64,000 bases of DNA from Octopus sinensis (GCF_006345805.1 NC_043000.1:32240001-32304000); one strand, 5' to 3'; positions 11,540-64,000 are shown, counted from the stretch's first letter. Translations and numbers: made by a program. Notes: generated by a model from the letters alone, not told the origin.

Positions 11540-11587
<48 letters not shown>

Positions 11588-12595: not shown

Positions 12596-12640
<45 letters not shown>

Positions 12641-13689
12641 TTGTGTTTGTCCCCCTAGCATTGCTTGACAACCGATGCTGGTGTGTTTACGTCCCCGTTA
12701 CTTAGCGGTTCAGCAAAAAGAGACCGATAGAATAAGTACTGGGCTTACAAAGAATAAGTTCCGGGGTTGATTTGCTCGACTAAAGGCGGTGCTCCAGCAT
12801 GGCCACAGTCAAATGACCGAAACAAGTAAAAGTAAGTATATATATATATATATATATATATGCATATATATATGGCCATTGCCAGCCTCCCCTGGTACCT
12901 GTGCCAGTGGCATGTAAAAAGCACCATCCGTACATGGTCGATGCCAGTGCCACCTTGACTGGCTTCCGTGCCGGTGGCATGTAAAAAGCACCAACCGATC
13001 ATGGCCATTGCCAGCCTCCCCTGGCACGTAAAAAGCACCCACTACACTCACGGAGTGGTTGGCGTTAGGAAGGGCATCCAGCTGTAGAAACACTGCCAGA
13101 TCAGACGAGAATCTGGTGCAGCCTCCTGGCTTCCCAGACCCCGGTCAAACCGTCCAACCCATGCTAGCATGGAAAACGGACATTAAATGATGATGATGAT
13201 ATACTCACACAAAAGCAGGCATACTGTAAATATGACAAAAAAAGACAACAGAGGAGAAGGCAATTTTCCTGAATATACTAAATTGTTTAGTGTTTAATGA
13301 AAAGAGAAAGTGTCTTGACGTTTTGAGCATTAGTCATTCATCAGAGGAGAGAAGAAAAAGAGGAGTGACAAAGACAGACAAGCAGTGCAAAGAAAAAAAA
13401 CAGAAAGCAAGTGAGAATACAATTGTATGAGAGGAAGTTAAAAGAAAGGAAAGGTGTGGTGTTAGGGGCTGGTCTCAGAACTTTGAACCATATGGAAGAA
13501 ATGACCAGCAATATGATGAGCAATATGTGGTACTCAAGAAGAACTACCAATCAAGCTCTCCATGCAAACACCAACCACTTTGCAGAGGGTATACTGGTGG
13601 GCGGAGTGTTGACATGTCATTGTCACAAGTGAGGTTGCTGTGAAACTTGCAAAACATCAAAGAAGAGAAGAAGAGGGAAGTAGAAAAGC

Positions 13690-14392
13690 TCCCACTACTA
13701 AAGGGGGAATCAGCTGGGAGGAGAAGGTGGAGAAGAGTGGCTGTTGAAGGACAAGCACAGGTTTCTGGCTATGGAGGAGATATTGGGAGAGGGGACATGG
13801 GGAGGGGGAGAGGGGGGAATGGAGAGGAAGAGGGGAAAGAAGGGGGGGAAAGAAGGGGGAATAGAGAGGAAAGGAGAGGGGAAGGGAAGAGGGAGAGGGA
13901 GAAAGAGTGGAGGGGAAGAGGAAGGGAGCGAGAGGAAGGGAAGAGAGGAGAGAGGAAGGGAAGAGAGGGAGAGAGAGGGATGGAGAGGAAGAGAGAGGGA
14001 TGGAGAGAGGAAGGGAGCAGTGGCTGAAAGCAAAGAAAGAGAGTATGATTGTTTGAAATAATGTGGACAAGGATGATAAGGAATATGGGAGGAGGAAGGG
14101 GAGGGGAAAAGAATTGGAGGAGGAGGAAAGGGAAAAAAGAGAAAGAGGAGAAAGAAGAGGAGAAAAAGAGGAGAAAAAAGAAGGGAAAGGGGAGAAAGAG
14201 AGGAGGAATAGAGAATGAGGAAGGGAGGAGAAAAGGAGGAGGAGGAGGAAGAAAGGGAGGAGGGGAGGAGAAGGGAGGAGGAAGAGAGGGAAGAATAGGA
14301 GAAAAAGATGAGGAAGAGGCAGACAAGAAGGAAGAGAAGGAAGAGAAGGAGGAAGTGCAGAGGAGGAGGAGGAATGAGAGGAAGAGGAAGTA
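13690..14392. repeat. About 700-bp G/A-only low-complexity tract
   Basis: Almost exclusively purines on the plus strand (GGA/GAG/GAA runs). Confidence 0.9.
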
Positions 14393-15691
14393 GATGATTA
14401 GGATATATTATAAGCTTCCATAGATTTTCTTTTTAGGAAATTCCACTCCCAAAGCATTGGTCAGCCTTTGATTAAAAGAAAAGATACTTGCCCAAGGTAG
14501 CATTGCAATTGCATTGAACCAAAAACCCAAGTTCAGAACCTCATCACAGATATTACATCATAGAGTATGACTAGAGAGTGGGGGTGGAGTGGGAGAGAGT
14601 GGAAGAGAGAGAAGGGAGAGGAGGAGAGAGAGGGGAGAGAGAGAGGTTGTTGTGGAATGTTAGAAAGAAATGAGAGTTGGTGAGTTTTTGAAATAAGAGA
14701 AATTCTTTAATGAGGAAGTGAATACTGCAATGGTGTTGGTTCTTGTTTCCCCTACCCTCATCACTTTCCAGCTGATTTGCAAGGGTCGTCAGATGGGGTG
14801 CACTCAGGGAGGCAGATTCCCTACAGATGAATGCCCTCCCTGTTGCCAAGCCTCACCTGTTTCCAAGGAAGGTAACATCTTGCCCGATATGGCCAGATAT
14901 GTTTTCATGGAAGAAGATTGGGAAGGAAAGACACTGCTTGTATGACAGGGACACTCATTTACAACTGTTACATGATGTGAAGACAAAGAAACATACACAA
15001 TGGGCTTCTTTTGGGCAAGCCAAGCACAGGCAAAGCCAAGAAAACCAATGCCATCAAATTCCACCATCATTTTGTCTCCACACTGCAAGAGAATATTCTG
15101 AGGGGAGGCAGTTTGGTCGAATCACTCACCAATGCACCCACAGTACTCCACCCCCACCATGATGACTATATGGTCCTCATCACTCCAACAGATGAACACT
15201 AAATCCAAACACGACCAAATTTGGTCAGCCTGGACTTGTAATACAAGATTCTTGCCCAAGATACTATGCTGTGGAACTGAACTCGGAACCATGTGACTGG
15301 AAAGCAAACGTCTTACCACACAGCCATACCTGCACTGAAATCCCTTTTTTTTTTATTTTATTTTCATTGTTAATTAAAATATTTTTTCTACTATAGACAC
15401 AAGGCCCGAAACTTTTGGGGAGTAAGGGCCAGTCGATTAGAATGACCCCAGTATGCAACTGGTACTTAATTTATTGTCTCCGAAAGGATGAAAGGCAAAG
15501 TCGACCTTGGCAGAATTTGAACTCAGAAAGTAAAAACAGACAAAATACTGCTAAGCATTTCGCTCGGTGTGCTAATGTTTCTGCCATCTTGCTGCCTTTT
15601 TGTTAATTAAAATATTACCTGAAAAATGTCTCAGGGTGAATCATTTTATAATTAAATAAACTGAGTGAAAATAAAACAAAGTTATACTTAC

Positions 15692-15794
15692 CAATATTTA
15701 TGTCTGGTAGAAAACTTGAGGTTAGCTCATCTTTTGAGGTCAAAAAGTTGTAAAGTAACTCACTTCCTCGCAATTGGGGGATGGCAACGAGTTT
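15692..15794 (-). CDS. SNX14: SNX14 exon M (PX end): KLVAIPQLRGSELLYNFLTSKDELTSSFLPDINI(G)
   Basis: 103 nt, AATGCAG|AAA...G|GTAAGT, phase 0->1. Matches KL...P.L..S.LL..FL......LPD.N.G. Confidence 0.92.
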
Positions 15795-16704
15795 CTGCAT
15801 TAAAAAGAAAATAGAAACATTTGCAATAAAAAAGATCACAAGGAAATCGAGTAGATTGGAATAAAAGAAATAAGATTTGGAAGGAAAAGAAACATTGTAA
15901 GGGAAAGAATTCAGTTATTGATATTTCAGTGGGAATTTCTCATCTTGTAATCACTTCAATGGAACTAAATTCATTCGGTGGGAGGGTGGGGGTCTTAAGG
16001 GTCCCTTTATGGAACTCTCTGACATAATATATTCCAGCAACCACTTTAGTTCTATGGTTCTGGATCAGCTCTGACTGGAGAGACATATAATCAAAGACAT
16101 TCCATCTACGATTGTCCCTTTTCTCAACCATTATCTTTCTAGGACTACATTTTTCAATGTATTCCACACTTTTCCAAGAAGCTAAGCTATAATATGCAGC
16201 AGATTTTTCTCATAACAACTCATGTTTTATTATACGGAATATACATCTTATCTTAGAAATTGCATTCCACAAAGAAAGGCAACAAAGCATTATTGGCACA
16301 AGTGTCCCCTGGTGTTCATGAATTCAAACTAAGTTCAGGATACTTTTATCTGATTGGTTCAGTTGTCTTAACTTCTCAACTAAAAGAGAATGGCTCTACC
16401 ACATCACAGCTGAGAGGCTGACAATAGCAATGGTATTTTGCTAGAATTTCATACATATATATCAACATTTACAGAGCTATCACACCCATAGAGTAGAGGC
16501 TAATATGTAGTGTTTGCCAGCCAGTTTAACAGCAACACTGACCCCTAACAGAGTCTACTTTGTTGTAAACATTTGAAATGGGGTCTGTCATCTGTGAATA
16601 GCTCCCACCCCTCTTCCTATCAAGATCCTCCCTGAGTGAGTGGGGTTGCAAGTAGAGACAGTAGAGAGGAAGGTAGTTTTATGGTAAGGGATGGAGGGAA
16701 TTAA

Positions 16705-16924
16705 CCCTTTCATTACCAGCCCACCTGAAACTGGCTCTGGCTCTAAGTACAAATGTCTTGTTTTCATAAGTTTTGAATTAAAATCTTCCAGCAAACCTTG
16801 GTCACAATTTATGTTCCAAACACTAGCTGAATAATTGCTTAGTTATTTTACTAAATTCTTTGTTATATTTAAAGTAATTGAAAGAAACACAGAACATCTC
16901 AAAATAAATACAGTAATGAAAGGG
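16705..16924. mobile_element. piggyBac-like MITE (220 bp)
   Basis: TTAA TSDs at 16701-16704 and 16925-16928; perfect 12-bp TIR CCCTTTCATTAC / GTAATGAAAGGG. Confidence 0.85.
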
Positions 16925-17309: not shown

Positions 17310-17410
17310 TTGTAGATACTGTTCAAATTGTTCCTTTTTACTCTCCATGAAATCTTGGTTTTTTGTACCAAAAGATTTCTTTGGCGGTAACTGACATGCA
17401 GAGAAGCCAC
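17310..17410 (-). CDS. SNX14: SNX14 exon L (PX): GFSACQLPPKKSFGTKNQDFMESKKEQFEQYLQ
   Basis: 101 nt, ATCTGCAG|GT...CAA|GTAAGT, phase 1->0. Contains the PX LP.K motif and F..YLQ. Confidence 0.93.
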
Positions 17411-18877
17411 CTGCAGATTTAGAAAACGGATATAAATATCAACATCACAATAAATAAGATCATCATCACCACTATCATCACCATTTTATGTCAGCTTTCC
17501 CTGCTGTTAAGAGTTACGCAGGTCATCACAGTCTGAGCAAATTCTTATTTCAGAATTGCTGCCTTTCTCAAGGAATTTGGGAAACAAAATCTCATTCAGA
17601 CATTCTTTTCTTATGTGATTTCTATGACTGGATGCCGTTCCTAATACCAACAACTTTACAAAAGTGCACTGGATTATACCTTTGTGGCACCAGCACATGT
17701 GAGGCTGCCATGTCCCCAGCAGGACAAGACAAAAGGGTTTTCTCATTGAGTATAAAGAGCAGTTTATTATGGCACCAACACTGCTGACAAAAGGGGCTCA
17801 CTGTTCTATATTGCACATTCATTTACACTAAGATGACCAACAGAATGAGTAAAAGAGAAAGCAATTGTGATAGCAGTGAAGAGAGAGAGAGAGAGAGAAG
17901 CACCTATGGCAATTACATTTTGGCTGGTAAGAAAGTGAGAAGAAAGAATAACGTGGATGTGGGCTGAAGATGAACATACACACATCCACACACACACAAT
18001 GAAGATTAACTATTTTCGTCTCCCTTTCTAGCTAAATCACTCTTCTTTTTTAATTGTTCTGAGATTGTTTCCACATAAACCTATTTCTAGAACCCTTCTG
18101 CTCTTTCAAAGTCTCACATTCTTGCTCCGCTGTTTGTTGATTTTATCATTACCACATGAAATGCCCAGCTAAGTTTAAGAAAATTCCTCTAGCTTTTAAT
18201 CACTCACCATTCTCTTCTCTAACTTGTAATACTAACATACTTACATGTGACGCTAATGTGTATTTTGAGCTAAAATAACTTTGTGGCTTATGTGCCGGTG
18301 GCACGTAAAAAGTACCAACCAATCGTGGCCATTGCCAGCCTACCCTGGCACATAAAAAGCACCATCCATATGTGGCTGATGCCAGCGCCGCCTTGACTGG
18401 CTTCCGTGTTGGTGGGACGTAAAAACCACCAACCGATCGTGGCCGTTTCCAGCCTCCCCTGGCACCTGTGTCGGTGGCACGTAAAAAGCACCCACTACAC
18501 TCACGGAGTGACTGGCCATAGGAAGGGCATCCAGCTGTAGAAACACTGCCAGATCAGACTGGAGCCTGGTGTAGCCTCCTGGCTTCCCATACCCCGGTCG
18601 AACTGTCCAGCCCATGCTAGCATGGAAAACAGATGTTAAGCGATGATGATCATCATGATGATGATGAATTCTTAAAATTTTTCAATTTGACCACTTCCAT
18701 ACTTTGCTATGATCCTCGCCTCACTAAAAGCCTCAAGTCCCTTACCGGTATCTCTCTATCTCTTTCTATCTCTTGTGTGTGGCCATTGCTTGTTTGAGAT
18801 GCATCCACCTATTCCCACCCCCACCACCAATATCAGAAACGCTGACACAGCTCTGCCTCACTTCTGTACCAGAAGAC

Positions 18878-19630: not shown

Positions 19631-19729
19631 GATATAATCCTAAACCCCTCAGAAAATTTGAACTCAAAACCTTTACACACAAGACTTTCACAATATTTAC
19701 AAGGACAAAGTCTATATTCAATGACTTAC

Positions 19730-19779
19730 CATGGAACTCAGTCAGTCTTTGTTCTAGAACATAAAACTCTTGATAGCGC
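19730..19779 (-). CDS. SNX14: SNX14 exon K (PX core): RYQEFYVLEQRLTEFH(G)
   Basis: 50 nt, TTTTGCAG|G...G|GTAAGT, phase 2->1. Near-identical to SNX14 RRY.EFYVLE..LTEFHG. Confidence 0.95.
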
Positions 19780-20374
19780 CTGCAAAAGAGTTGCAAGAGA
19801 TAAAAGAGAACGAAACAACAAAGACAGCCTTTAAATTGGTTCTTCCAGAACACAGTTTCAGAAATGCTGCTTAAACATAAAACACACAGCAACAGCCATT
19901 TTTAAAAGAAATGAAGAAAATTAGAATTGACTAAAATAAGTTGATAAACTTTGTGAAATTTAATTCTATTCTTTTAAAATTCTATTATTTCACACAAATC
20001 TTAGATATTTCAAGGCTAAGTATTTCAAATCTTTGCAAAAATATTAAAAAAAAAGTTTATTTAAATGAGTGGTTGATAATAATTGTTCTTAACCAGAAAA
20101 CAGAGTTAAGGGAAAATAAAATGGAAATTCATAATTTCAATCCATTTTAGAAAAGTTTTCAAGGAATAAGTGAAACTTCCACAACCTCATTTTCTAAGAA
20201 CTTGCTGCAGCATTTCGTGTTCCATATAAAAGTGATAAAGAATTAAGAAACAGCCAAACCAAATGCATGACCTGTTACTATCTCTGTTAAAATGCAAGTT
20301 TTTGTTTTAATAAACATTGTATTAACGAAGATTTACTTTTAATAAATGATTCTGAATATAATGAAAACACCTAC

Positions 20375-22251: not shown

Positions 22252-22450
22252 CTTCTGATGAAACATCAACTCTATGAACATCAATGATGAAGACAAAAAA
22301 CAGTTTCTTTATGTTGTCAGGGTCTGGCCGTCCTCCAATGCGTGGAATGGTAATTCTCCATGTACTCAAGTCATGGAGAGGACATTCCCAATTTGATGAC
22401 CAATCATAAAAGTTTTCATATGAAATTTCATCTTCAAGAGAACTACAAGA
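22252..22450 (-). CDS. SNX14: SNX14 exon I (PX start): SCSSLEDEISYENFYDWSSNWECPLHDLSTWRITIPRIGGRPDPDNIKKLFFVFIIDVHRVDVSSE
   Basis: 199 nt open frame, TTTTTCTCAG|TCT...G|GTCAGT, phase 0->1. L..W.I.IP and VF.IDV.R.D match the start of the SNX14 PX domain. Confidence 0.9.
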
Positions 22451-25186: not shown

Positions 25187-25815
25187 CAGGGTGCAATGGG
25201 TAGATTGTTGCCATTTTATATTTTTAATTTCATGCATGTGCATTGTTTGTTTTTGATTTTGTTCACTACACAGTATAGTAGGGTCAGCTGGGCACCATCT
25301 GTGAGAAAAATAGCACCATGACACAATTCACTCAGCCAGAAATTTGGAAATGACATGGTGCACCTCCAATACAAATATTTCAGAATGTTTGGGTGTCAAT
25401 CTGAGGACAGTACAGAGGATTTGGAAAGAGTTGGATGAGTCTAATGGTGTTTATGAAGGTATGGCAGCTCGGAAAACTCACTCTGATCATTCTGATAAGA
25501 ACAGAACTCCTGAATTTGTTGGTGAGATCCAGGCCATGATTGACAGTGATCCTTCCAAGTCAGTCAGATCCATTTCCAGAGACATGGAAGTGTCCAAGTT
25601 TCTTATCAGGTAGGTAGTACATGAAGACATTTGGTACTCCTCATACAAGATGAGAAGGGGCCAATTTTTACCCCAAGCCATCAAGGACAAGAGGAAAGAC
25701 CACACTATGATGCTTTTGAACAAACTAAAGAATCCTTTTCAACTGAACATGCTTTGGTTTTTTTCAGACGAGAAAAATTTCTGCCAGGATCAGATGGTAA
25801 ACACACAGAACAACT
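25187..25815 (+). mobile_element. 5' half of a Tc1/mariner (maT-like) transposon
   Basis: TA|CAGGGTG start. HTH-like NTNISECLGVNLRTVQRIWKEL and the first catalytic motif WFFSDEKNF are present; truncated afterwards. A second fragment of the same family lies at 27945-28112. Confidence 0.75.
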
Positions 25816-26486: not shown

Positions 26487-28584
26487 CTTTTGAAAGAAAA
26501 AAAAAGGAAAAAAATTAATAAATTAAAATCAAATTAAAGATACAATATTCCATTGCTGTTTACAAAATATGATACATTTTTGAACAATTTTCTTTTTTTT
26601 TTTAACTTTAATTATGGTTTCTCATAAATATAAAATCTGAGATTTTTTAAAAAAAGAAAGAAAATGAAAATTGAGAGTTGTTTCTCAAGAAAACTCACAT
26701 TTGTGATGCATGTGAAAGTGGAAAGGCTCTTATTAGGAATTAAAACTGAGTTGTGGACTCAGTCCCCTAAAGCTCTTAAATAAAAGGCTATGCTAATATG
26801 TGATACACAGTTAATTTAAATTAAATTAAAAACCATTCTGACCCAAATCATTAGTAATACTATGTGCCATTAATACTTATAATTTGGGTAAATAGTTTTT
26901 TAATTAATTCAATTATGTATCATAATTAAATAATTATAATTTAATCACATTTATCCTGATGAAACAACTGTAGAACACAAAGTATGAATTATATGTGAAA
27001 TTCATGCTTTTCTGCTTTTAAAAATATTTCATAATGCCTTGAGATGACATAAGGTCACTGTGGAAGAATAGTAAACTTCCACAAGTGTTCAAACCATTTT
27101 ACTCAAGTTATTTTCACTGCTCTGAGCTTCTCCCATAGTTCATTACTGGTATCCATATTTCCAGACTGAAACCTTCTAAACCAACACTAAACCAATTCCC
27201 ATTGTTGTGGTCTTCCCTTCAGACACTGTGTCAAGGCTTACAGCAGTATTTATGCTCAAATTTACTTTCCTGCTTGGAAATTAGTCTCAGTTCTTTGGTA
27301 GGTACCATCACTGCTAGCAGATCAAGAACTTATAATAATAATAATTATAGCTTCATTTAAATTAAATCTGAATAATTAAGATACAAATACACAAGTAATC
27401 ATTCATAATTAGTAGCATTTGTCATGATATAAAAGAAAAACTGAATACCGATTATTTTAACATTATATAAATGTAACATCAAGTTGTTTAAGTGTGTGTG
27501 TGTGTGTATGAGGGAGGAGAGGGTATGAGAATCATTAATTTCATTTCAACAGCTTGAAACAAAATGGTATAATTAATGAAATCAATGAACTTGTCAACTT
27601 GATCAGTTCTAAAAAGCATGAAATGCCAAACAAACATTTAACAAAATTCCCTAAAATTGGTTTGGCACAATACTTTTTGACCAACTCTGGTCACATAACA
27701 ATATATAACAAACACAACAGTTGTAATATAAAGACAAACACAAATTAATTAATATTAAATGATTATCATTATTTCTTATAAACAGTTGCAAAAGAGCTAA
27801 AGGTTTATGCCTCAAAGGACTAAATTGTTGATCTAAGTTCAATTTCAGAATGAAAGCCACCATATCACTTACACTGTTAATAAGTTTCAGCAATAAGTGT
27901 CACACAACCTCTAATGCTTAATATCTTGTGTAAAGCCAGAAATCAATAGTGTGCTTTCTTGTAATGATTTGGAAACGGCATGGTGTATCTCCAATACAAA
28001 CATTTCAGAATGTTTGTGTGTCAATCTGAGAACAGTAAAGAGGATTTGGAAAGAGTTGGATGAGTCTAATGGTGATTATGAAGGTATGGCAGCTCGGAAA
28101 ACTCACTCTGTACAAATCATTACAAGAAAGCAAAATCAGGATTTCAACAACCTCAGAGGTTAAATAAACGATGAGCAATATTTCAAACACATATTGAAAC
28201 GTGTCATAGGATGATTTGCACGTAAACATATAGCTACACATATACACACACATAAGTGCATAGATGACTACAAATATTTCAACAACCAGTTACTCAAAAG
28301 AAATTTGGAATTAAAAAGTAAAACCATCTTATTGACATTTGTATGTGACAGAGAAATAATCTGATACTGACAAACATCTCCAGAATTCATTTTGTCAGGC
28401 ATGTTGTCATAAGAGGACAAATCTTAGAATTCTTTAATGTCACAGGGTATGAAAACAAAGTACTCTCATAGTACTAGCATCCCCACTGCACACCCTGAAG
28501 TGGCTGAGAGCACCCTTTAGACTTGTCAAGGAATTAACAATCTCTCTACTGCTGGGGCTATGAGGATATATATCCAGTGTATAT

Positions 28585-29324: not shown

Positions 29325-30597
29325 TCAGGTCATCCCATAAGTTCTGTCCGATTTTACCTTTTTTAAAATTGAATGAAATTTAATAGTATTGTAGAATGTC
29401 TAATGGAATTAAAAATTATTTTTATGCACTTGTGTACATTTAAACTAATTAAATATTATTTTACAGAATAATAGAATTAAAATTTCTTTGATTAAAACCC
29501 TTTCTAACATGGAAGTATCCAAAGAGCATTTAAGGCATATAATGCTTTATGAGTACAAAAAAGGAAACTCTGAAGCGACTCAAAACATACACTCAGTTTA
29601 TGGGAAAGAATGCTTGAATGAAAGAACTTGCAGAAGACGGTTTGCAAAATTCAGGAGTGGAGACTTCAGCCTTGAAGATGAAGATCAAACAGGACATCCA
29701 GTTGAGTTTGATGATAAGTTCCTTGAGGCATTACTTGAAGAAAATCCTGCATTATCAGGTGAAGAATTGGCAATAAAGTTTAGTTCAAACCATACAACTG
29801 TTCGTCATCTTCAACAACTTGGAAAGGTTCCTAAACTTGGAAAATATGTGCCTCATGAATTGTCCGAAAGCAACCACAAATCCCGAGTTGACATCTGCTC
29901 TTCTCTCCATTCTCGCAAACTCATTTCACCCTTTTTGGATAGACTCGTGACTGGTGACGAAAAATGGATCTTCTATTGAAATGTTAAACGTTGTAAACAG
30001 TAGCTTGGTAAAAGGGAAAAAGCCCAACCACAACTGAGAAGGGAACTTCATGGGAAAAAGGTTCTCTCTATCTAGTGGGATTGCAAAGGAGTAATTCACT
30101 TTGAATTGTTACCACCTAATGCAACAATCAATGCTCAAGTCTACTGTCAGCAATTAGAGCATTTGAACCAAGCTTTGAAGAAAAAAGACCCACTTTAGTG
30201 ATTCGAAAAGGAGTGATGTATCATCAGGACAATGCATGACCCCTCACTGCAAAGATCACATCACAGAAAATTGAAGAGCTTGGTTGGGAAAAAATTCCTC
30301 ATCCACCTTATTTTCCCGACCTTGCTCCTTCAGACTACCATTTGCTTCATTGTTTACAGAAGCATTTGGGGGACGTAACTTTCGCAAGCCAGGAGGAGGT
30401 CAAAACTGACATTTCAGAGTTCTACGCTTTGAAACCAAGAGTTTTACATTGATGGGATTAAAAAGCTTGTAAATAGATGGAAGGAAGTCATAGATAATCA
30501 GGGAAAGTACATTGATGATTAAATTTCAATCAAATAAAACATTTGATCACTTGTTTTCTTTATTCAAATTTCAGACAGAACTTATGGGATGACCTGA
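29325..30597 (+). mobile_element. Full-length (1273 bp) inactive mariner transposon, DD34D type
   Basis: TA TSDs (29323-24, 30598-99); 24-bp perfect TIR TCAGGTCATCCCATAAGTTCTGTC. Transposase 29509-30522 has the motifs TGDEKW, HQDNA and PDLAPSDY, with several stops (first at 29977-79) and frameshifts. Confidence 0.95.
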
Positions 30598-36514: not shown

Positions 36515-38558
36515 ACGTGACAGCTAGCCGCTGTTGAGCGCTCTTTTCGTTTTCAGCAGCCTCAGAAGCAACACGTATTTGTTCGTCTCCCCGTGGCCTT
36601 TAGGCACAACTTCACAAGCCAGCCCCTACTCAAATCGTCCTGTCGAAAGACCCTTGTCCTACGTCCTGGTTTTTTTGTTGTTTATTTTTTATTTTTACCG
36701 TTATTGTTTTTACGTTTTTGTATTCTTATTGGTGTCACGTATTCTGTATTTTTGTTTGTGTACTTCGATCGTTTTCCGTCCTTTCGTTGTATACATTCGA
36801 AGCTTTCTTCCAGGGGATCTAATGCGCTTGGCTTAGATTTCCCTTGGCGGGCTGGCCATATCGGAGCAATCTCAAGATTAATCAGCCGAAATTGCTAAGA
36901 TGATCTGGTTCTTGACTGATGACTGAGGGCTTCGAATGTCCCGTCCTGTGGTTCTTGTGTCGTCTCTGTGGTGTTTCATGTTCTTGTCCATGTCTGTATT
37001 TAATTTTACTGTTTACCTATATAATCGGCGGCTACGTATCCACAATTGTCCTTATACGATAAGTATATTTTTTCTCAAGCTTTGATACGACTCTTAATCT
37101 GTCTCTTTTTCTCTCTCTCTCCCTCCTCCCTTATTCCACTTCCGTTCTTTCCCTCTCCATCCGTCCCCCCCCCATTCTACGTTTCTCTATCTCTCTCACC
37201 TCCGCCCCCTCGATCTGTCTCTTTCTTTCTCCCTCGTCCACCTTCTCTCCTTTTCATCTGTCCCTTTCTCCTGTCTTTTGTTCTCACGTGACAGCTAGCC
37301 GCTGTTGAGCGCTCTTTTCGTTTTCAGCAGCCTCAGAAGCAACACGTATTTGTTCGTCTCCCCGTGGCCTTTAGGCACAACTTCACAAGCCAGCCCCTAC
37401 TCAAATCGTCCTGTCGAAAGACCTTGTCCTACGTCCTGGTTTTGTTTTGTTGTTTATTTTTTATTTTTACGTTATTGTTTTTACGTTTTTGTATTCTTAT
37501 TGGTGTCACGTATTCTGTATTTTTGTTTGTGTACTTCGATCGTTTTCCGTCCTTTCGTTGTATACATTCGAAGCTTTCTTCCAGGGGATCTAATGCGCTT
37601 GGCTTAGATTTCCCTTGGCGGGCTGGCCATATCGGAGCAATCTCAAGATTAATCAGCCGAAATTGCTAAGATGATCTGGTTCTTGACTGATGACTGAGGG
37701 CTTCGAATGTCCCGTCCTGTGGTTCTTGTGTCGTCTCTGTGGTGTTTCATGTTCTTGTCCATGTCTGTATTTAATTTTACTGTTTACCTATATAATCGGC
37801 GGCTACTACGTATCAATTGTCCTTATACGATAAGTATATTTTTTCTCAAGCTTTGATACGACTCTTAATCTGTCTCTTTTTCTCTCTCTCTCCCTCCTCC
37901 CCCTTATTCCACTTCGTTCTTTCCCTCTCCATCCGTCCCCCCCCCATTCTACGTTTCTCTATCTCTCTCACCTCCAGCCCCCTCGATCTGTCTCTTTCTC
38001 TCTCCTCACTCGTCCACCTTCTCTCCCTTTTCATCTGTCCCTTTCTCCTGTCTTTTGTTCTCACGTGACAGCTAGCCGCTGTTGAGCGCTCTTTTCGTTT
38101 TCAGCAGCCTCAGAAGCAACACGTATTTGTTCGTCTCCCCGTGGCCTTTAGGCACAACTTCACAAGCCAGCCCCTACTCAAATCGTCCTGTCGAAAGACC
38201 CTTGTCCTACGTCCTGGTTTTGTTTTGTTGTTTTTTTTTTATTTTTACCGTTATTGTTTTTACGTTTTTGTATTCTTATTGGTGTCACGTATTCTGTATT
38301 TTTGTTGTGTACTTCGATCGTTTTCCGTCCTTTCGTTGTATACATTCGAAGCTTTCTTCCAGGGGATCTAATGCGCTTGGCTTAGATTTCCCTTGGGGGC
38401 TGGCCATATCGGAGCAATCTCAAGATTAATCAGCCGAAATTGCTAAGATGATCTGGTTCTTGACTGATGACTGAGGGCTTCGAATGTCCCGTCCTGTGGT
38501 TCTTGTGTCGTCTCTGTGGTGTTTCATGTTCTTGTCCATGTCTGTATTTAATTTTACT

Positions 38559-38563
<5 letters not shown>
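36515..38563 (+). repeat. A-B-A-B-A tandem array (unit 771/777 bp; A about 501 bp, B about 270 bp) flanked by (TA)n
   Basis: Unit starts at 36515, 37286 and 38063; the third unit stops at the end of A and runs into (TA)n. Copies differ mainly by small indels. Confidence 0.95.
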
Positions 38564-38615
<52 letters not shown>

Positions 38616-50740: not shown

Positions 50741-50807
50741 TTCATCACTTTGGTGGAATAAAGGCAGGAATGTACTCTCCAAGAGATTGTAAGCATGTTC
50801 ATAAGCT
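50741..50807 (-). CDS. SNX14: SNX14 exon E (RGS end): AYEHAYNLLESTFLPLFHQSDE
   Basis: 67 nt, TTTGTAG|A...GAA|GTAAGT, phase 2->0. Matches SNX14 AYEH...LLE..F.P.F..SDE. Confidence 0.92.
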
Positions 50808-52128
50808 CTACAAATATAAAACAATTGTTAAAGAACATGATTACATGAGAGGAAACTTCAATAAAATTAATTAACTCTATTATTAGAATAGAGTAAATTA
50901 TTCTAGAGTAATTTACTCTAATAATGACAAACACATCTTACTAAATTCTTCGTTATCTTCAAAAATAATTGAAAGGTAATGTTTCAAGAGAAATATAGCA
51001 AGGGATAAAATCTTTGACTTGTAAATTATTTCTTTAATTGAAGATTTTTATTGTTTAGCTTCTGGTAATTGAATAGAACTATGATCAAAAGGCATTCCAA
51101 CGGTGACCATCTCATGGAGTCTTTTTGGGAGTTTGAAGAACACAATGTCTTATGTATCCTTTCTTCATTTAAAATGGTGTGATTTGAGGGAAATTTTCTT
51201 GTTGCCTCTTTCATTGCCTCCCTTAATGGTTTTCAAATAATGTGACCTGTTTCATAAAATAACATGGGCCCTTAAACGAAGATTTTGAAATAGTGTGGGG
51301 CTGACATTCAGTATTTTCCCCAAGACCATAACTTCATGTTTGAAATAAACTGATGGAATGTTAAGTAGGCTCCTACATAGGATTGAACCCATGAGTTGAT
51401 AGTTGTTAGCAGCACCAGTAACAGTAATGAAATAAATAGTGAGGCAATGAGGGAGCCTCTAAATGGTTACCCAATCTGTGAGAAATAGCAGCAAAATTTT
51501 CCTCAAATTATACCCAATCAGAATGGAACTGGAAGCAAGACAAGATTGTCATGGCTGGAATGGCTTTGGTCAGACGCTAAACAACAGCTAAGTGCATTGC
51601 TATTTGAATTATAAACTGCAGAACTTTTCGATTTAAATGTTTCATGATTGATAAATAAAAGACAAGAATTCAAAATATTCTAAGGAGTTTATTTTTGATG
51701 AAATTTCAGGAGCTTTCCATTGCTTCAAATTTGACAATGTCAAGAGAACTAAACCTCACCAGACACGACCATCACCACCCCACAAATATCCAAATCACAT
51801 GAAAACATTTTTATATTTCATCATCAACATCATTTAACATCCATTTTCCATGCTGGAATGGATTGGATGGTTTCACTGGAGTGGGAAAGCTGGACCTAGT
51901 TCCAATCGGCTTTGGCTTGCTTTCTACAGCTGGATGCTCTTCCTAACACCCAACCACCTTACAGAATGTGTTGGGTGCCTTTTAAGGACCCAGAATGGAT
52001 GGGTTTTTTTTTACATGGCACTGGCATGGGTGCTTTTTGCAACCAGGTCAGTAACTACCAGTTGAATACTGGTCTCAGTCAGTTCAATGACAACATCCTG
52101 CCAAAAACACCAAGTATTATTATTATTA

Positions 52129-52159
<31 letters not shown>

Positions 52160-52901
52160 CATCATTATTATTTTTATTATTATTATTATTATATTATTAT
52201 TATTAAAGTAGCAAACTGGCCAAATCCTAAGCATGTGAAACAAAACTCTTGGCAGCATTTCATCCATCTTTACGTTCTGAGTCCAAGTTCCACAGAAGTC
52301 AACTTTGCCTTTTATCCTTTCAGAGTCGATGAAATAAGTACCAGTCATGTACTGGGGTCAATGTAATCAACTTCCCCCCACCCTCATAATTAGCTAGTCT
52401 TCTACCAAAATCTGAAGCCATTATTACGAAAGGCCAAATCATCAGCATGCAGGACGAAGTGCTTAGCAACCAAGCTTGGTTCTGCTTTTCGCTGTTTTGG
52501 GGGTCAATCAAAGGAGTATTGTTTAAGTACCAGACTCAATGTAAATCAACTCAACCTTCCCCCACATTTCAGGCCTTGTGCCGGTAACAGAAAGAGTTAT
52601 TATTATTCAATAATTAATTAATTAATTAAGATAGTGGATTAGGGAAAAAACAGAATACTGGTCAAAATACTTTGCAGTATTTGTTCCAGCTGTTCATGTT
52701 CTTAGTTCAAACTCTGCTACATTCCAGTTTGTCTTTCATCCCTCCAAGGTTGACAAAAGAAAATACAAGAACTGGGTCAACTTTATTGAGTAAGCCCCTC
52801 CCCTTGAATTTCTGGCCTGGTCTCTAATTTAAAAGCAATTATCACGATTAAATATTAAAACATTAAAAAATAAACAAAAAGAGAAATGATAAAAATCTTA
52901 C

Positions 52902-52959
52902 TTGAAAAGTGGAGGAGATGTTCTCAATTTAATCACATTTTGGTAAGGACCATCAACAA
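52902..52959 (-). CDS. SNX14: SNX14 exon D: (I)VDGPYQNVIKLRTSPPLF(K)
   Basis: 58 nt, CATTCTAG|TT...AA|GTAAGA, phase 1->2. Matches SNX14 I.EGPY..V.KL.T...LF. Confidence 0.9.
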
Positions 52960-53589
52960 CTAGAATGGAATAGAAAAAAGAAAACATATACACACACACA
53001 CACACATATATATAGTAAATCAAAAAAAAAAAGAGAACAAACATCATCATCATTTAACCTCCATTTTCCATGCTGGCATGGGTGGACAGTTTGACTGAGG
53101 TTTGGAGAGCCAGTGGCTGCACCAGGCTCCAATCTAATCTGGCAATGTTTCTACAACTGGATGCCCTTGCTAATGCCAACCACTACGCGAGTGTAGTGGA
53201 TGCTTTTTATGTGTCACCAGCACAGAAGCCAATCAAGGTAGGCCTGGCATCGATCACGTTCAGATCATGCTTTTTATATACTACCGGCACAGAGGCCAGT
53301 CAGGGGATGCTGGCATCGGCCACATCCAGATGGTGCTTTTTACATGCCATTGACACGGTAGCCAGTCAGGGGGTACTGGCATCGGCCATGTTTGGATGGT
53401 GCTTTTTACATGCCACCAGCATGGGAGCCAGTCAAGAGGTAGTGGCATCAGCCATGTTCGGATGGTGCTTTTTACATGCTACAAGCACAGGAGCCAGTCA
53501 TGGGGTACTGGCCACAGCTATGACATTGGTTTAACTTAACTCAACAGGTCTTCTCAAGCATATCATATCACCCAATGCATCAGAGGTAC

Positions 53590-55267: not shown

Positions 55268-55423
55268 TGCTCTTTAGTTCTGTTACAACATCGTCAGCAA
55301 ATAGGATTTTGTCCACTGCATAAGGGGCACAGTAACTTTGGTAAAGATCTTTGGCAGTGTTGTGCAGCTCCTTCAATTCTTCGTCCGTGAGATCTGGATT
55401 CAGAATATGACCACTGAAATCAG
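55268..55423 (-). CDS. SNX14: SNX14 exon C (RGS): (A)DFSGHILNPDLTDEELKELHNTAKDLYQSYCAPYAVDKILFADDVVTELKS
   Basis: 156 nt, ATTTCAG|CT...A|GTAAGT, phase 1->1. Aligns with SNX14 F..RIL.P.L..DE...LH......Y..YC....DKI.F....V.E. Confidence 0.92.
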
Positions 55424-57072: not shown

Positions 57073-57824
57073 TCAATGCACTCACAATCCACATCTAAAA
57101 TAATAATAACAACAACAACAATAACCCTTTCTACTCTAGGCACAAGGCCTGAAATTTAGAGGAGGGGCCAGTTGATGAGATTAACCTCAGTATGCAACTG
57201 GTACTTAATTTGTCAACTCCGAAAGGATGGAAGGCAAAGTCACCCTCAGCAGAATTTGAACTCAGAATGTAGCAGCAAATGAAATACTGTTAAGTATTTC
57301 GTCCAGCATGCTAACGATTCTGCCAGCTCGTTGCTTTAACAATGAAAACAATAATGATTTCAAATTTTGGTACAAGGCTAGTAATTTCAGGGGGTGGGGA
57401 TAAATTGATTACACCAAACCCCAGTACTTAACTGGTACTTATTTTATCAACCCTGAAAGGATGAAAGGCAAAGTCGACCCCAGCAGAATTCGAACTCAGA
57501 ACATAGCGATAGGCAAAATCATCATCATCATTTAACATCTGTTTTCTACGCTAGCATGGGTTGGACGGTTCGATCGGAGTTTGGAAGCCATGGAGGCTGC
57601 ACCAGGCTCCAGTTTGATCTGGCAGTGTTTCTACAGCTGGATGCCCTTCCTAACGCCAACCACTCCAAGAGTGTAGTGGGTGTTTTTTACGTGTCACTGG
57701 CACAGGGGCCAGGGGAGGCTGGCAAACAGCCACGATCGGTTGGTGCTTTTATGTTTCATCCAGCATGCTAATGAGTCTGCCAACTCACTGCCTTAACAAT
57801 AATAAGAGAGAGAGAGATGCTTAC

Positions 57825-57939
57825 CACAAGCCAGGCAGAATTGCAAAACACTAACAGCAGCTTCAGACTTCATAAATTGCATAAAAGTATACAAGAGGTC
57901 AGTTTGAGACATGATGTCTGCGAGTTCAAGATGTAAACA
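57825..57939 (-). CDS. SNX14: SNX14 exon B, copy 2 (identical tandem duplicate)
   Basis: Base-for-base identical to 58345..58459 including both splice sites, offset by 520 bp. Only one copy can be used per in-frame mRNA. Confidence 0.8.
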
Positions 57940-58344
57940 CTGCAAAAGAGGAGAAAGAAATATGTGAAATGTCGTACAGGGTGTCCCAGAAAAATCTACC
58001 AATCAGATTTCTTTGTAATTAATCATTATCATCATCATCATCATCGTCGTTTAACGTCCGTTCTCCATGCTAGCATGGGTTGGACGGTTCGACCGGGGTT
58101 CTGGGAAGCCAGAAGGCTGCACCAGGCTCCAGTCTAATTTGGCAATGTTTCTACAGCTGGATGCCCTTCCTAACGCCAACCACTCCAAGAGTGTAGTGGG
58201 TGTTTTTTACGTGTCACTGGCACAGGGGCCAGGGGAGGCTGGCAAACAGCCACGATCGGTTGGTGCTTTTATGTTTCATCCAGCATGCTAATGAGTCTGC
58301 CAACTCACTGCCTTAACAATAATAAGAGAGAGAGAGATGCTTAC

Positions 58345-58459
58345 CACAAGCCAGGCAGAATTGCAAAACACTAACAGCAGCTTCAGACTTCATAAATTGC
58401 ATAAAAGTATACAAGAGGTCAGTTTGAGACATGATGTCTGCGAGTTCAAGATGTAAACA
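58345..58459 (-). CDS. SNX14: SNX14 exon B, copy 1 (RGS start): CLHLELADIMSQTDLLYTFMQFMKSEAAVSVLQFCLAC
   Basis: 115 nt, acceptor TTTTGCAG|TGT, donor TGTG|GTAAGC, phase 0->1. Matches the SNX14 RGS motif LEL..I..Q.DLL..FM.F.K.E.AV.VLQFCL. Confidence 0.9.
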
Positions 58460-59809
58460 CTGCAAAAGAGGAGAAAGAAATATGTGAAATGTCGTACAGG
58501 GTGTCCCAGAAAAATCTACCAATCAGATTTCTTTGTAATTAATCATTATCATCATCATCATCATCGTCGTTTAACGTCCGTTCTCCATGCTAGCATGGGT
58601 TGGACGGTTCGACCGGGGTTCTGGGAAGCCAGAAGGCTGCACCAGGCTCCAGTCTAATTTGGCAATGTTTCTACAGCTGGATGCCCTTCCTAACGCCAAC
58701 CACTCCGTGAGTGTAGTGGGTGCTTTTTACGTGCCACCTGCACAGGTGCCAGGCGGGGCTGGCAACGGCCACGGTCAGATTGGTGTATTTTATGTGCCAC
58801 CGGCACGGAAGCCAGTCGAGGCGGTGCTGGCATCGGCCACGAGTCGGATAGTGCTTTTTACGTACCACCAGACCAGGGATCCTGGCTGGTTCAATTCGAT
58901 TTCGATTTCGCTTGCCCCAACATGTCTTCACAAGCAAAGGGGGTTGGCAAGGGTGCCTGTCGTACGGTCGCATTGGAGTATTTTACGTGCCACGGCCACG
59001 AGTCGGATAGTGCTTTTTACGTACCACCAGACCAGGGATCCTGGCTGGTTCAATTCGATTTCGAATTATATTATATATATATATATATTTCTTTACTGCC
59101 CACAAGGGGCTAAACATAGAGGGGACAAACAAGGACAGACAAATGGATTAAGTCGATTATATCGACCCCAGTGCGTGACTGGTACTTATTTAATCGACCC
59201 CGAAAGGATGAAAGGTAAAGTCGACTTCGGAGGAATTTGAACTCAGAATGTAACGACAGACGAAATACTGCTAAACATTTCGCCCAGAAAACAATCAAAC
59301 TTCCTAAATTATACAAATTATGTTTTACCTATGTAATACAAGAATCAGATTTCAAAATGACCACCTCTTGCTTTGATCAGGGTCTGCAAACAAGTGGTTG
59401 CTGAACTGCAACAGCGCCACACAAGTAAGAAGAGCTTCTTTCAGATCCACTTGAGTATGAGATAGCTGAGACATCTCTCTTTAAGAGAGTCCAGGCAGAA
59501 AAATCCATTGGCTTGATGTCTGGGTTTGAGGGAAGCCAAAAATCATTGTCCCAAAAACTGCGAAAGTGCTCTCTGCACCATTTTTGTACATTTTACATTT
59601 GTGCAACTCTTACAAAGAATGCTGTGGGCATTGCATTGTACAAGTGCAGTACATTCCCATAAGCTTTTCTTTGCTAGAGAGCAATTGCATTTCTTTTTTT
59701 GCATATTATCCATTAATAGTTAAAACCCTTTTGCATAAATTTATTATCTTTTTGCATCCTTGCTATGCATATGTAAACATTTTCTAAATCTAAATGTTTA
59801 TTTTGCAGA

Positions 59810-61668: not shown

Positions 61669-62799
61669 TTAATAATGATGTATGTCACTTTTATATTTGA
61701 TAACATTCAATCAGTTAAAGTTAGAAAAACTATTAAAACCAATCAAATCATATCAACATTTCTTTCTTTCTCACAATTTAATAAAAGCCTTCTCCTCATA
61801 GTTTTGGATTTTAGGTGTGCACTCCCTAATTTTTGTAATAATTCCTGTTCCTAGACTTCAGCACTTGCTAATTTTGCTACATATACTTGATTAAAGAGCT
61901 GTGGAACTTGTAGCAGATTGTTTGATTGAGAAGGATACCTTTAGAGGGTAATTTAATTTCAATGATCCAACAGTTATGAGTTACAGAAGTCTTTTTAAAA
62001 AGGTTTTGGCCCTACCATAGCCTACTAGGGTCTGATATATAACCCAGTACAAATCATATACAATGTCTTCTTTGATTTATCAGCCCTCAAAGTTCTATCA
62101 ACTGGAAACTCATCAGTATTTAATCCATTGCCAGCTCCGGTCAAACTGTCCATTTTCCATACTAGCCTGGACTGGACAGTTTGACCAGAGCTGGCAATGT
62201 TGGCAGCTGTACCAGGCTCCATTGCCTGTTATGTCATCGTTACTACAGCTGGATGCTTTCCCTAATGCCAACCACTTTATAGTGTACAAAGGGTGCTTTT
62301 TATGCAGCACCAGTAGGGTCGTCAAAGTAAAAACCAGCTGAATTTTTTTTTTTCTTTTTTGTTTAAACTGTTTATATTACAAGACAAGCAATTCACTTCA
62401 TTATTTATTAAATTTGGAGTATAGGAAGAAAAACAGAGAAAATTAGTAGCCAAATTTTTTTATATTTAAATAAAATTTTAACATTTAGAAATTGTACATA
62501 AATTTCTCTTGACTTTTATTTGTTTACATAATGCAAGTTGATGAATTGTTTCTCCTCCAGTTTTATGTCCTGATGCAACTCGGCAGTGAACAGGAAGTGG
62601 TTCACATTGCCAGAGAGAGAGAGAGAGAAGCAAAACTAAAGAGAAGGGACATAACTCAATGGTTGTAAACAATTTTAAATCTTCATCACATTACGTAGGA
62701 ATGGCCACACACTTAACAAAAGATTAGATTATTTCTGTCCTGTCCTGATGCCATTTTCCCTTCTGCTTCTGTCCTCTCTTTTACCCATCATCTCTCTTC

Positions 62800-64000
62800 T
62801 TCTCCTTCATCTAGTGTTTTAAATCCAGATTTTGTCCCCATTAACGGGGATGGCTGGATCTACCACACTACCATAGCATTTGGGTGTCTTCCCTTCTCAA
62901 GCTAATCCTCCCAATCTCCCCTTCCACCTGTCCCCTTGGTCTACCTCGCTTTCGCACTCCATTTACCTCAAATGCAATCACCCTCCTCAGGACATGCTCT
63001 TCATCCCTTCTCAAAACATGCCCATACCACCACACTCCATTCACCCTTGCCAGCCATTCCACCAATTATTCCAACCCCAGCATCCCCATCAAATCTTCAG
63101 TCCTCCTCTTATCAAACAGCTTCACCCCACACATTTCTCTCATCTACCATGAATCCATTTCTCACATCTCGTACGCAACACTGCATTGCTCTCTCAGTCC
63201 TTCTCAAAATTACCATCTCTCTCTCTCTCTCCCTCAGACACCCTGTCTCACTCCCTCCCAAACAGCATTGAAGCTCTCACACAACTCCTATCGACCCTTC
63301 TTTTCATCTTCAATGAGAACCTTTTCCCATATAACAATGCTCCACATTTCCTGAACTTCACCCAGCCAAGTCTCACTCTTGCTGTCACAGCTGCTTCACA
63401 TCCACCACTTACATCCACCCCGCTCACCATCACTGTCTTCCCGAGGTTTATCTTCAAACCCTTGCTTTCAAATGCCTCCTTCTATTTCAAAAACTTCTCC
63501 CTCAATCCCTCCGTCTCATTCGTCAGAACAAGGCCATCCACATGCAGTATCTCCATTATCAATCCCTCTCTTGCACTCACCGTTACCGCATCAACCACTA
63601 TTGCAAACACCGGTGACAACACAGATCCCTGATGCACACCAACTTTCACCACAAACTCCTCCGCGAGCTCTGATCCAATCCTCACTCTTGTCTTTACCCC
63701 CTCATACAAACTCATCATTGCCCTCACTATTATCTCCAATACACCTCTCTTCCTCAATGCCCACCCAATCACCTTCCTTGGAACCCTATCAAATGCCTTC
63801 TCCAGATCAACTCCTTATCTCAGTACTCCTCTTGCAATCTCCTTACAATGGACACTGCATCTATTGTCCCCCTTCCTGGCATAAGACCAAATTGTATCAC
63901 GTCCACATCCACCTCTTTCCAAATTCTCCTCTCCAACTCCCTTTCCACTATCTTCATTGCATGCTCCAATAACTTCACTCCCCTATACACCCCACAACTC
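62800..64000 (-). mobile_element. Degraded RTE LINE (RT domain to 3' end)
   Basis: WALRKRGV...VGVHQGSVLSP..., AAVTARVRLGWVKFR...YGKRFSLKMK, WYGHVLRRDEEHVLRR...RKRGRPR. Frameshifted; runs off the window. Confidence 0.9.

What the first reader, a model, noticed from the sequence alone, without database searches (positions are those of the whole stretch)
57626..58706. Repeat-mediated perfect duplication of a frameshifting SNX14 RGS exon
Seen: two different RTE-tail copies flank exon B. The middle copy is a chimera with its left part from the right-hand repeat and its right part from the left-hand repeat. The switch lies within a 41-bp identical tract (58146-58186), and the 520-bp units are identical. 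The 115-nt exon is phase 0->1; B+B' reads ...FCLAC-V-F-T-S-stop. The 405-nt gap between copies is long enough to splice, so there is no steric mutual exclusion. Known: unequal crossover between repeats duplicates exons, seeds mutually exclusive splicing, and premature stops trigger NMD; human SNX14 loss causes cerebellar ataxia (SCAR20). Inference: either a very recent, possibly hypomorphic allele caught at the birth of an exon pair, or an assembly artefact, since a repeat-confused assembler would give the same pattern.
Basis: partly seen in the sequence, partly recalled or inferred. Interest (0 to 1): 0.75.

Follow-up and report, generated by a model that had tools for sequence, protein, structure and literature searches.

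The report
Perfect tandem duplication of SNX14 exon
A 520-base piece of a sorting-nexin-14 gene, carrying one coding exon, is present twice in a row with no differences; the join lies inside an abundant short repeat. It is either a very young gene-breaking variant or an assembly error, and only raw reads can decide.

Summary
Window 57626-58186 equals 58146-58706 (561 nt, 0 mismatches), which is two 520-bp units plus a shared 41-bp tract. The units are bounded by two old copies (85.9% identical) of an abundant ~320-bp SINE-like repeat. The middle copy is a clean chimera of the two, and it switches inside their longest exact shared block (41 bp).

Each unit carries a 115-nt minus-strand exon with identical AG/GT splice sites (58345-58459 and 57825-57939), 405 nt apart. 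The gene is an SNX14 orthologue. This exon plus the next one gives a Pfam RGS match. A downstream exon matches only human SNX14 among solved PX structures. The best homologues are SNX14-like proteins with PXA-RGS-PX-Nexin_C. Splicing both copies gives ...FCLAC-VFTS-stop.

The structure is what unequal exchange or template switching between direct repeats produces. Sequence alone cannot separate a real young allele (about 0.55) from an assembly expansion (about 0.4). The contig runs without gaps through many repeats that share 41-79-bp exact tracts, which argues against a small-k graph loop. Indel-rich differences in a nearby 771-bp array suggest a noisy long-read assembly, where expansion errors occur.

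Side finding: in other unidentified animals, the homologous SNX14 exon is amplified in place into arrays of 6 to more than 95 copies.

The parts
57518..57754 (-). Repeat copy L. It is a SINE-like element. The minus orientation is inferred from the simple-repeat tail, (ATC)n on the + strand, at its left end.
57626..58145 (.). Duplication unit 1 (520 bp)
   Evidence: 561-nt perfect match at offset 520
58146..58665 (.). Duplication unit 2 (520 bp), identical to unit 1
58666..58706 (.). Third occurrence of the 41-bp tract, in copy R. The perfect identity ends here.
58037..58274 (-). Middle repeat copy M. It is a chimera: its left part is identical to R and its right part is identical to L.
58146..58186 (.). 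41-bp switch tract inside M. It is the longest exact block shared by L and R.
58141..58191 (.). M-specific diagnostic 51-mer. L differs from it by 1 base and R by 2 bases.
58553..58868 (-). Repeat copy R, 85.9% identical to L
58345..58459 (-). Exon copy B, the upstream copy in the transcript. It is 115 nt, phase 0 to 1, and encodes the start of the RGS domain.
57940..58344 (-). 405-nt intron between the two exon copies, with GT...AG ends
57825..57939 (-). Exon copy B', the downstream copy, identical to B
57926..57928 (-). TGA stop codon that comes into frame if B is spliced to B'
55268..55423 (-). Next SNX14 exon (ADFSGHILNPDL...VVTELKS), with a phase-1 acceptor. Joined to B it gives a Pfam RGS match.
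52901..52960 (-). SNX14 exon, RGS part (VVDGPYQNVIKLRTSPPLFK). Limits are approximate, from tblastn.
50744..50809 (-). SNX14 exon, RGS end (RAYEHAYNLLESTFLPLFHQSD), 91% identical to the chiton SNX14-like protein
22253..22450 (-). SNX14 exon, start of the PX domain. Limits are approximate.
19728..19790 (-). SNX14 PX exon (RRYQEFYVLEQRLTEFHG). Among solved structures it matches only human SNX14.
17310..17414 (-). SNX14 PX exon. Limits are approximate.

Best explanation
This is a genuine, very young tandem duplication in the sequenced haplotype. It arose by unequal exchange, or by replication template switching, between two directly oriented and diverged copies (L and R) of an abundant SINE-like repeat. 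The copies lie 520 bp apart and flank the first RGS-domain exon of an SNX14 orthologue. The exchange happened inside their only long identical block (41 bp). The product is L - exon - [R-left/L-right chimera] - exon - R.

Shown: the structure, the identity of the gene and exon, and the reading-frame consequence.

Inferred: both copies carry the same strong acceptor, the same donor and at least 199-247 nt of identical flanking intron, and the 405-nt spacer is a competent intron. The default outcome is therefore inclusion of both copies, a +115-nt frameshift, a stop after four codons (VFTS*) and probably nonsense-mediated decay. That would make this a loss-of-function or hypomorphic allele, most likely heterozygous and rare. 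A functional message needs exactly one of the two copies to be included.
For: - The 561-nt perfect match at offset 520 is the longest exact repeat in the window.
- M is a clean R-left/L-right chimera, and the switch lies in the longest exact L/R block. This is the expected product of homology-mediated unequal exchange. It is not expected from a random contig-end overlap.
- L and R are old, independent insertions: 85.9% identical with 5 gaps.
- The window has no N. It runs through at least 25 copies of the same family, and other same-orientation pairs share 41-79-bp exact tracts without any duplication. The assembler was therefore not limited to k of 41 or less, and a graph loop at this tract is not a natural error for it.
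- There is no gap between the copies, whereas gaps are the commonest mark of false duplications (PMC9516828).
- The exon is real coding sequence: Pfam RGS E 3.5e-8, SNX14-specific PX exon, exon map against the chiton SNX14-like protein.
Against: - No read-level data are available, so copy number in the animal is unverified.
- A frameshifting duplication in a conserved gene is what selection removes and what errors do not avoid.
- The three copies of the nearby 771-bp array differ by 14 gap openings against 4 mismatches. Old repeat pairs in the window show 17:1 and 9:0 mismatches to gaps. This suggests a noisy long-read assembly with residual consensus errors. Such assemblies contain 'expansion' errors, and short-read polishing can add structural errors (PMC8590762).
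- After short-read polishing, an artefactual expansion would end up as exactly this perfect chimera.
- No independent copy of the locus could be found in any collection.
Confidence: 0.55

Rival explanations
1. This is an assembly artefact. The animal has a single L-exon-R copy. A 520-bp 'expansion' was introduced during long-read layout, consensus or polishing, for example by pairing the R copy in some reads with the 86%-identical L copy in others. Short-read polishing then made both units identical and turned the middle repeat into an R-left/L-right chimera.
For: - Perfect identity and the chimera are equally predicted by this route.
- The indel-dominated differences among the 771-bp array copies point to a noisy long-read assembly.
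- Structural expansion errors occur in such assemblies, 84.8% of structural errors are shorter than 500 bp, and Racon or Pilon short-read polishing increased structural errors in most assemblies tested (PMC8590762).
- False exon duplications are documented in published assemblies (PMC9516828).
- The result would break a conserved gene.
Against: - There is no gap or N between the copies.
- Other repeat pairs with equal or longer exact tracts (41-79 bp) in the same window were assembled without duplication.
- Overlap-based long-read assemblers do not accept a 240-bp overlap at 86% identity, and reads of several kb span the whole 1.1-kb structure.
- The false duplications described in PMC9516828 typically sit at gaps or at heterozygous regions.
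Confidence: 0.4
2. The duplication is real and is tolerated because splicing uses only one copy. It would be an incipient alternative or mutually exclusive exon pair, kept in check by decay of the two-copy and zero-copy messages.
For: - Including both copies shifts the frame, and so does including neither, so only one-copy messages would survive surveillance.
- In other animals the same exon exists in many tandem copies inside an otherwise intact SNX14 gene.
Against: - The copies are identical, so they would give no isoform difference.
- The 405-nt spacing gives no steric exclusion.
- Both copies have complete and identical splice signals.
- In the tolerated arrays of the other animals (L002), only the first unit keeps the native 3' splice site, which is not the case here.
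- No transcript data are available.
Confidence: 0.04

Closest known systems
Alu-Alu (SINE-SINE) mediated intragenic tandem exon duplication in human disease genes. An example from my own knowledge, not checked here, is the Alu-mediated 6-kb duplication of BRCA1 exon 13.
   Same: Two diverged, directly oriented SINEs flank an exon. The junction is a chimeric SINE with the crossover in a short identical tract. The duplicated exon is out of frame and predicts a premature stop.
   Different: This unit is much smaller (520 bp against several kb). The repeat is an invertebrate SINE-like family, not Alu. No pedigree, read or transcript evidence exists, so the event itself is unverified.
False duplications in genome assemblies (Ko et al. 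2022, PMC9516828) and 'expansion' structural errors in long-read assemblies (Inspector, PMC8590762)
   Same: A duplicated exon in a reference assembly with identical copies. The apparent consequence is a gene gain or a frameshift.
   Different: There is no assembly gap between the copies. The copies carry no heterozygous differences, so this is not a heterotype duplication. The defining tests, read depth and read-pair concordance, could not be run.
Mutually exclusive exon pairs derived from tandem exon duplication
   Same: Two adjacent homologous exons of equal length and phase. Inclusion of both, or of neither, shifts the frame.
   Different: The copies have zero divergence. The 405-nt intron gives no steric block. 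There is no selector or docking asymmetry and no transcript evidence.
In-situ tandem arrays of the homologous SNX14 exon in other animals, found here (L002, L001, L003)
   Same: The same exon of the same gene, the first RGS exon, is multiplied head to tail inside the gene.
   Different: Those units are 132/131 bp or 78 bp, made of the exon (or its 3' part) plus only 8-11 nt of intron. There are 6 to more than 95 copies at 96-98% identity, with no flanking SINE. Only the first unit keeps a 3' splice site, so a normal message is still possible. The window has two complete exon-plus-intron units.

Membership tests
Repeat-mediated unequal exchange (NAHR or template switching) tandem duplication | Two homologous repeats in direct orientation bound the duplicated segment | tested here: met
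   L 57518-57754 and R 58553-58868 have the same orientation and are 85.9% identical
Repeat-mediated unequal exchange (NAHR or template switching) tandem duplication | The junction copy is a chimera (distal-repeat left part, proximal-repeat right part) that switches in a tract identical in both | tested here: met
   M equals R up to 58145 and equals L from 58187. The 41-bp tract is the longest exact L/R block.
Repeat-mediated unequal exchange (NAHR or template switching) tandem duplication | The unit length equals the spacing of the two repeats in register | tested here: met
   The offset is 520 throughout, and the tract recurs at 57626, 58146 and 58666
Repeat-mediated unequal exchange (NAHR or template switching) tandem duplication | The duplication exists in the organism's DNA (spanning reads, PCR, or a single-copy allele elsewhere) | not testable with these tools
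   No reads are available. No related locus was found in any collection.
SNX14 (PXA-RGS-PX-Nexin_C sorting nexin) | RGS domain encoded by the duplicated exon plus the following exons | tested here: met
   B plus the next exon: Pfam RGS E 3.5e-8, 34.3 bits against a cut-off of 23.9
SNX14 (PXA-RGS-PX-Nexin_C sorting nexin) | PX domain of SNX14 type downstream on the same strand | tested here: met
   RRYQEFYVLEQRLTEFHG matches only human SNX14 (4PQO, 4BGJ) among solved structures. PX exons were mapped by tblastn.
SNX14 (PXA-RGS-PX-Nexin_C sorting nexin) | The best homologues are SNX14 proteins with the four-domain architecture | tested here: met
   P0001 is 'sorting nexin-14-like' of Liolophura sinensis and has PXA, RGS, PX and Nexin_C
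SNX14 (PXA-RGS-PX-Nexin_C sorting nexin) | PXA and Nexin_C exons present in the same gene | not testable with these tools
   tblastn finds only residues of about 318-703 in the window. The 5' and 3' ends of the gene lie outside it.
Mutually exclusive exon pair | Two adjacent homologous exons of the same length and phase | tested here: met
   Two identical 115-nt exons
Mutually exclusive exon pair | The copies differ, so they give distinct isoforms | tested here: not met
   0 differences
Mutually exclusive exon pair | A mechanism that enforces exclusivity (a too-short intron, incompatible splice sites, or competing RNA pairings) | tested here: not met
   The intron is 405 nt with standard GT-AG ends. 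The flanks of both copies are identical, so no asymmetry exists. Only frameshift plus decay could act.
False duplication of an assembly (criteria of PMC9516828) | An assembly gap or a depth gap between the copies | tested here: not met
   There is no N in the window. A depth gap is not testable.
False duplication of an assembly (criteria of PMC9516828) | Half or lower read depth and discordant read pairs over the copies | not testable with these tools
   No reads are available
   A 72.8%-identical copy at 62148-62302 lies 3' of minus-strand reverse-transcriptase remnants. The joined remnants hit RVT_1 at only E 5.5e-4, 20 bits, below the cut-off, and separately they give no hit. The clade was not determinable.

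The most novel reading that the evidence does not exclude
The first RGS exon of SNX14 may be recurrently prone to in-place tandem multiplication in distant animals. The evidence is two identical copies here, about 30 to more than 95 copies of a 132-bp exon unit in two ENA samples, and 6 copies of a 78-bp unit in a JGI sample. On this reading the window's duplication is a real allele whose messages are rescued by single-copy splicing, which would be the zero-divergence stage of an alternative exon cluster.
Probability: 0.04. Interest if true: 0.6.

Novelty: new member of a known kind. Interest (0 to 1): 0.3.

Why it matters
If the duplication is real, the reference animal carries a fresh, probably inactivating, repeat-mediated exon duplication in a conserved endolysosomal and lipid-handling gene. 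Loss of that gene in humans causes a recessive cerebellar ataxia (my own knowledge). It would be a textbook-clean example, outside mammals, of dense SINEs driving exon-scale structural variation, with both parental repeats and the recombinant preserved and not a single later mutation.

If it is an artefact, it matters practically. Gene models of SNX14 built on this assembly will be frameshifted or will silently skip a copy. The locus would also be a useful test case for assembly quality control.

Either way the question is settled by one look at the raw reads.

Tried and rejected
1. I looked for independent copies of the locus and found none.
   - The search for homologous proteins with the spliced RGS piece found nothing.
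   - Exact-product look-ups found nothing for the exon-bearing ORFs or for the L-, M- and R-specific ORFs. An M-ORF hit would have shown the chimera in another assembly.
   - An exact 26-mer of the exon was absent from JGI metagenome contigs.
   - No paper mentions SNX14 together with octopus.
I replaced it with tblastn using the chiton SNX14-like protein.
3. I rejected chance. No other exact repeat in the window comes near 561 nt.
4. I rejected an old duplication kept identical by selection or gene conversion. The identity covers intron and SINE sequence as well as the exon.
5. I rejected a random contig-end overlap. The junction would then not fall in register inside the only long block shared by two repeats.
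6. I rejected a small-k de Bruijn loop as the likeliest artefact. The contig resolves many equal or longer shared tracts.
7. I tried to use the absence of indel differences between the two units, against the 771-bp array, as evidence for a copy-paste artefact, and judged it indecisive. A 2 x 520-bp duplication is within reach of paired reads anchored in the flanks and would polish clean. The inner copies of the 2-kb array would not.
8. The organisms carrying the exon arrays could not be named.

Full report
**1. The observation**

At an offset of 520 bases, the longest uninterrupted run of matches in the whole 64-kb window is 561 nt: 57626-58186 equals 58146-58706 with no mismatch. An independent search for exact repeats ranks this block first. 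The next longest is 337 nt, inside an unrelated 771-bp array. The finding's interval 57626-58706 is therefore two identical 520-bp units plus a 41-bp tract that occurs three times, at 57626, 58146 and 58666.

I aligned the three repeat copies in register.
- The middle copy M (58037-58274) is identical to the right copy R (58553-58868) everywhere left of 58146.
- M is identical to the left copy L (57518-57754) everywhere right of 58186.
- L and R themselves are only 85.9% identical, with 28 mismatches and 5 gap openings.
- The 41-bp tract is the longest exact block that L and R share. The next longest are 24 and 20 bp.

**2. The exon**

Each unit holds a 115-nt exon on the minus strand: 58345-58459 (B, upstream in the transcript) and 57825-57939 (B'). 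Both have the same acceptor (...tttctcctcttttgcag|) and the same donor (|gtaagc). The spacer 57940-58344 is 405 nt.

One copy reads CLHLELADIMSQTDLLYTFMQFMKSEAAVSVLQFCLAC plus one base. The next exon downstream (55268-55423, minus strand) opens with two bases that complete that codon. Joining B to B' gives ...FCLAC-V-F-T-S-stop, with the TGA at 57926-57928. Skipping both copies also shifts the frame, so a functional message needs exactly one copy.

**3. The gene**

- B plus the next exon matches Pfam RGS (E 3.5e-8, 34.3 bits, cut-off 23.9).
- A minus-strand exon at 19728-19790 (RRYQEFYVLEQRLTEFHG) matches only human sorting nexin-14 among all solved structures (4PQO, 4BGJ).
- A search of 1.84 billion representative proteins found 177 relatives. 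The best one, at 60% identity, has PXA, RGS, PX and Nexin_C domains. NCBI names it 'sorting nexin-14-like' from the chiton Liolophura sinensis. The next hits are SNX14 or SNX14-like proteins of a nemertean, a spider and a hemichordate.
- tblastn with the chiton protein places residues of about 318-703 on the minus strand, from 58.5 kb down to 7.5 kb, in ten exons without frameshifts.

The 5' (PXA) and 3' (Nexin_C) parts of the gene lie outside the window. 'SNX14 RGS exon' is therefore supported. A mollusc is plausible, but the species could not be checked.

**4. The repeat**

L, M and R belong to a family of roughly 320 bp with at least 25 copies in the window, in both orientations, 72-90% identical to R. 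On the plus strand each copy starts with (ATC)n, so the element proper, with its simple-repeat tail, lies on the minus strand, the same strand as the gene.

A 72.8%-identical copy at 62148-62302 lies 3' of degenerate minus-strand reverse-transcriptase fragments. Scanned separately those fragments give no Pfam hit, and joined they give only a sub-threshold RVT_1 match. A SINE or LINE-tail relationship is plausible. 'RTE' is not verified. SINEs make up 11.6% of the Octopus vulgaris genome according to PMC13282606, which fits the density seen here if the window is from an octopus.

**5. Mechanism**

The ancestral state is L - exon - R. Unequal exchange between sister chromatids or homologues, or a replication template switch from R back to L, inside the identical 41 bp, gives L - exon - (R-left/L-right) - exon - R. 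That is exactly what is seen. A duplication with random breakpoints, or a raw overlap of two contig ends, would not place its junction in register inside the only long block that two repeats share. Some homology-driven process made this structure.

Zero differences in 520 aligned positions give a 95% upper bound of about 0.6% pairwise divergence. With the calibration used for O. vulgaris repeats (Jukes-Cantor distance 0.065 for about 18 My; PMC13282606), that is under roughly one million years. This estimate assumes an octopus-like rate. L and R are old insertions, each about 7% from their common source.

**6. Real or artefact**

For a real allele:
- The window has no N.
- It passes through at least 25 copies of the family.
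- It contains other same-orientation pairs sharing 41-, 44-, 57- and 79-bp exact tracts with no duplication.

False duplications characterised in vertebrate assemblies are mostly separated by gaps and sit in heterozygous regions (PMC9516828). Neither applies here.

For an artefact:
- The three copies of the 771-bp array at 36515-38571 differ by 14 gap openings against 4 substitutions, mostly single-copy one-base deletions. Old repeat pairs in the window show 17:1 and 9:0 substitutions to gaps.
- That pattern is typical of residual consensus errors of noisy long reads where polishing cannot reach.
- A false 520-bp expansion would be polished into exactly this perfect chimera.
- A frameshift in a conserved gene is also what selection removes and what errors do not avoid.

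The lack of any indel between the two units looks suspicious next to the array. However, homopolymer content is similar in both, and a 2 x 520-bp structure is within reach of read pairs anchored in the flanks. I judge this point indecisive.

My estimate is 0.55 for a real allele and 0.40 for an artefact. The remainder goes to a real duplication that is tolerated through one-copy splicing.

**7. Consequence if real**

Both copies have identical, strong splice signals and at least 199-247 nt of identical intron on each side. The 405-nt spacer is a competent intron, so nothing enforces exclusivity. By analogy with out-of-frame single-exon duplications in human genes (my own knowledge), both copies would be included and the message would end at VFTS*. 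That would be a loss-of-function or hypomorphic allele, probably heterozygous. The 'birth of a mutually exclusive pair' idea fails two of its defining features: the copies do not differ, and no exclusivity mechanism exists.

**8. Side finding**

The homologue search returned short ORFs that contain the exon twice. Following them up gave three loci.

- **L002** (ENA ERZ25069865, a 3.35-Mb contig). The homologous exon sits between the last PXA exon (5588-5632) and the next RGS exon (15940-16089) of an otherwise intact SNX14 gene. There it is a tandem array of about 30 units of 132 or 131 bp (10048-13985, 97% matches). Each unit is the 121-nt exon plus about 11 nt of the downstream intron. Only the first unit keeps the native acceptor (cag|AGT), and every unit keeps GTGAGT.
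- **L001** (ENA ERZ25073814). At least 95 units are present at the end of a 139-kb contig.
- **L003** (JGI 3300022205). The 3' 70 nt of the exon plus 8 nt of intron is repeated 6.3 times, with a 78-bp unit.

The hosts are unidentified. The nearest named relative is a leech RGS protein at 44% identity.

Because ORF callers favour long open arrays, such cases are over-represented in the protein collections, so the coincidence with the window should not be over-read. It does show that multiplying this exon can be compatible with an intact gene when the extra copies lack a 3' splice site. That condition is not met in the window.

**9. Verdict**

The event is a new example of a well-known kind, SINE-mediated tandem exon duplication, or else an assembly expansion. 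Interest is modest. The raw reads of the specimen would settle the matter at once.

Noticed in passing
L002:10048-13985 (ENA ERZ25069865 ctg6028); L001:1-9751 and 14042-16817 (ENA ERZ25073814 ctg5567); L003:268-758 (JGI 3300022205): In other unidentified animals, the exon homologous to the window's duplicated SNX14 exon is amplified in place into tandem arrays. L002 has about 30 units of 132/131 bp inside an otherwise intact SNX14 gene, L001 has at least 95 units, and L003 has 6.3 units of 78 bp. Each unit is the exon (or its 3' part) plus 8-11 nt of intron with a conserved GTGAGT. In L002 only the first unit keeps the native 3' splice site.
   Followed up: partly
window 36515-38571: A tandem array of 2.7 copies of a 771-777-bp unit at about 98% identity. 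The copies differ mostly by single-copy one-base deletions (14 gap openings against 4 mismatches). This looks like residual long-read consensus error and hints at how the assembly was made.
   Followed up: partly
window 58834-58908 and 58993-59067: Just right of repeat copy R, a 75-nt stretch recurs 159 bp further on with one mismatch. This is a second, small, near-perfect local duplication at the end of the same repeat.
   Followed up: no
window 2402-3155: A minisatellite with a 24-bp period that keeps long open frames on both strands (...ARDVLYKV... repeated about 25 times).
   Followed up: no
window 29488-29979 (+), with related fragments at 25344-25613 and 27951-28163: An ORF that looks like the N-terminal part of a mariner/Tc1-type transposase (by eye, not tested) lies inside the 24-kb SNX14 intron. 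The two related fragments are about 94% identical to each other.
   Followed up: no
window 62868-63990 (-): Degenerate, frame-broken reverse-transcriptase remnants of a LINE (RVT_1 E 5.5e-4 when joined). They are followed on the same strand by a diverged copy of the SINE-like family at 62148-62302.
   Followed up: partly
window 26488-50744: A 24-kb intron separates the last RGS exon from the next SNX14 exon. The mapped part of the gene (residues of about 318-703) covers more than 51 kb.
   Followed up: no
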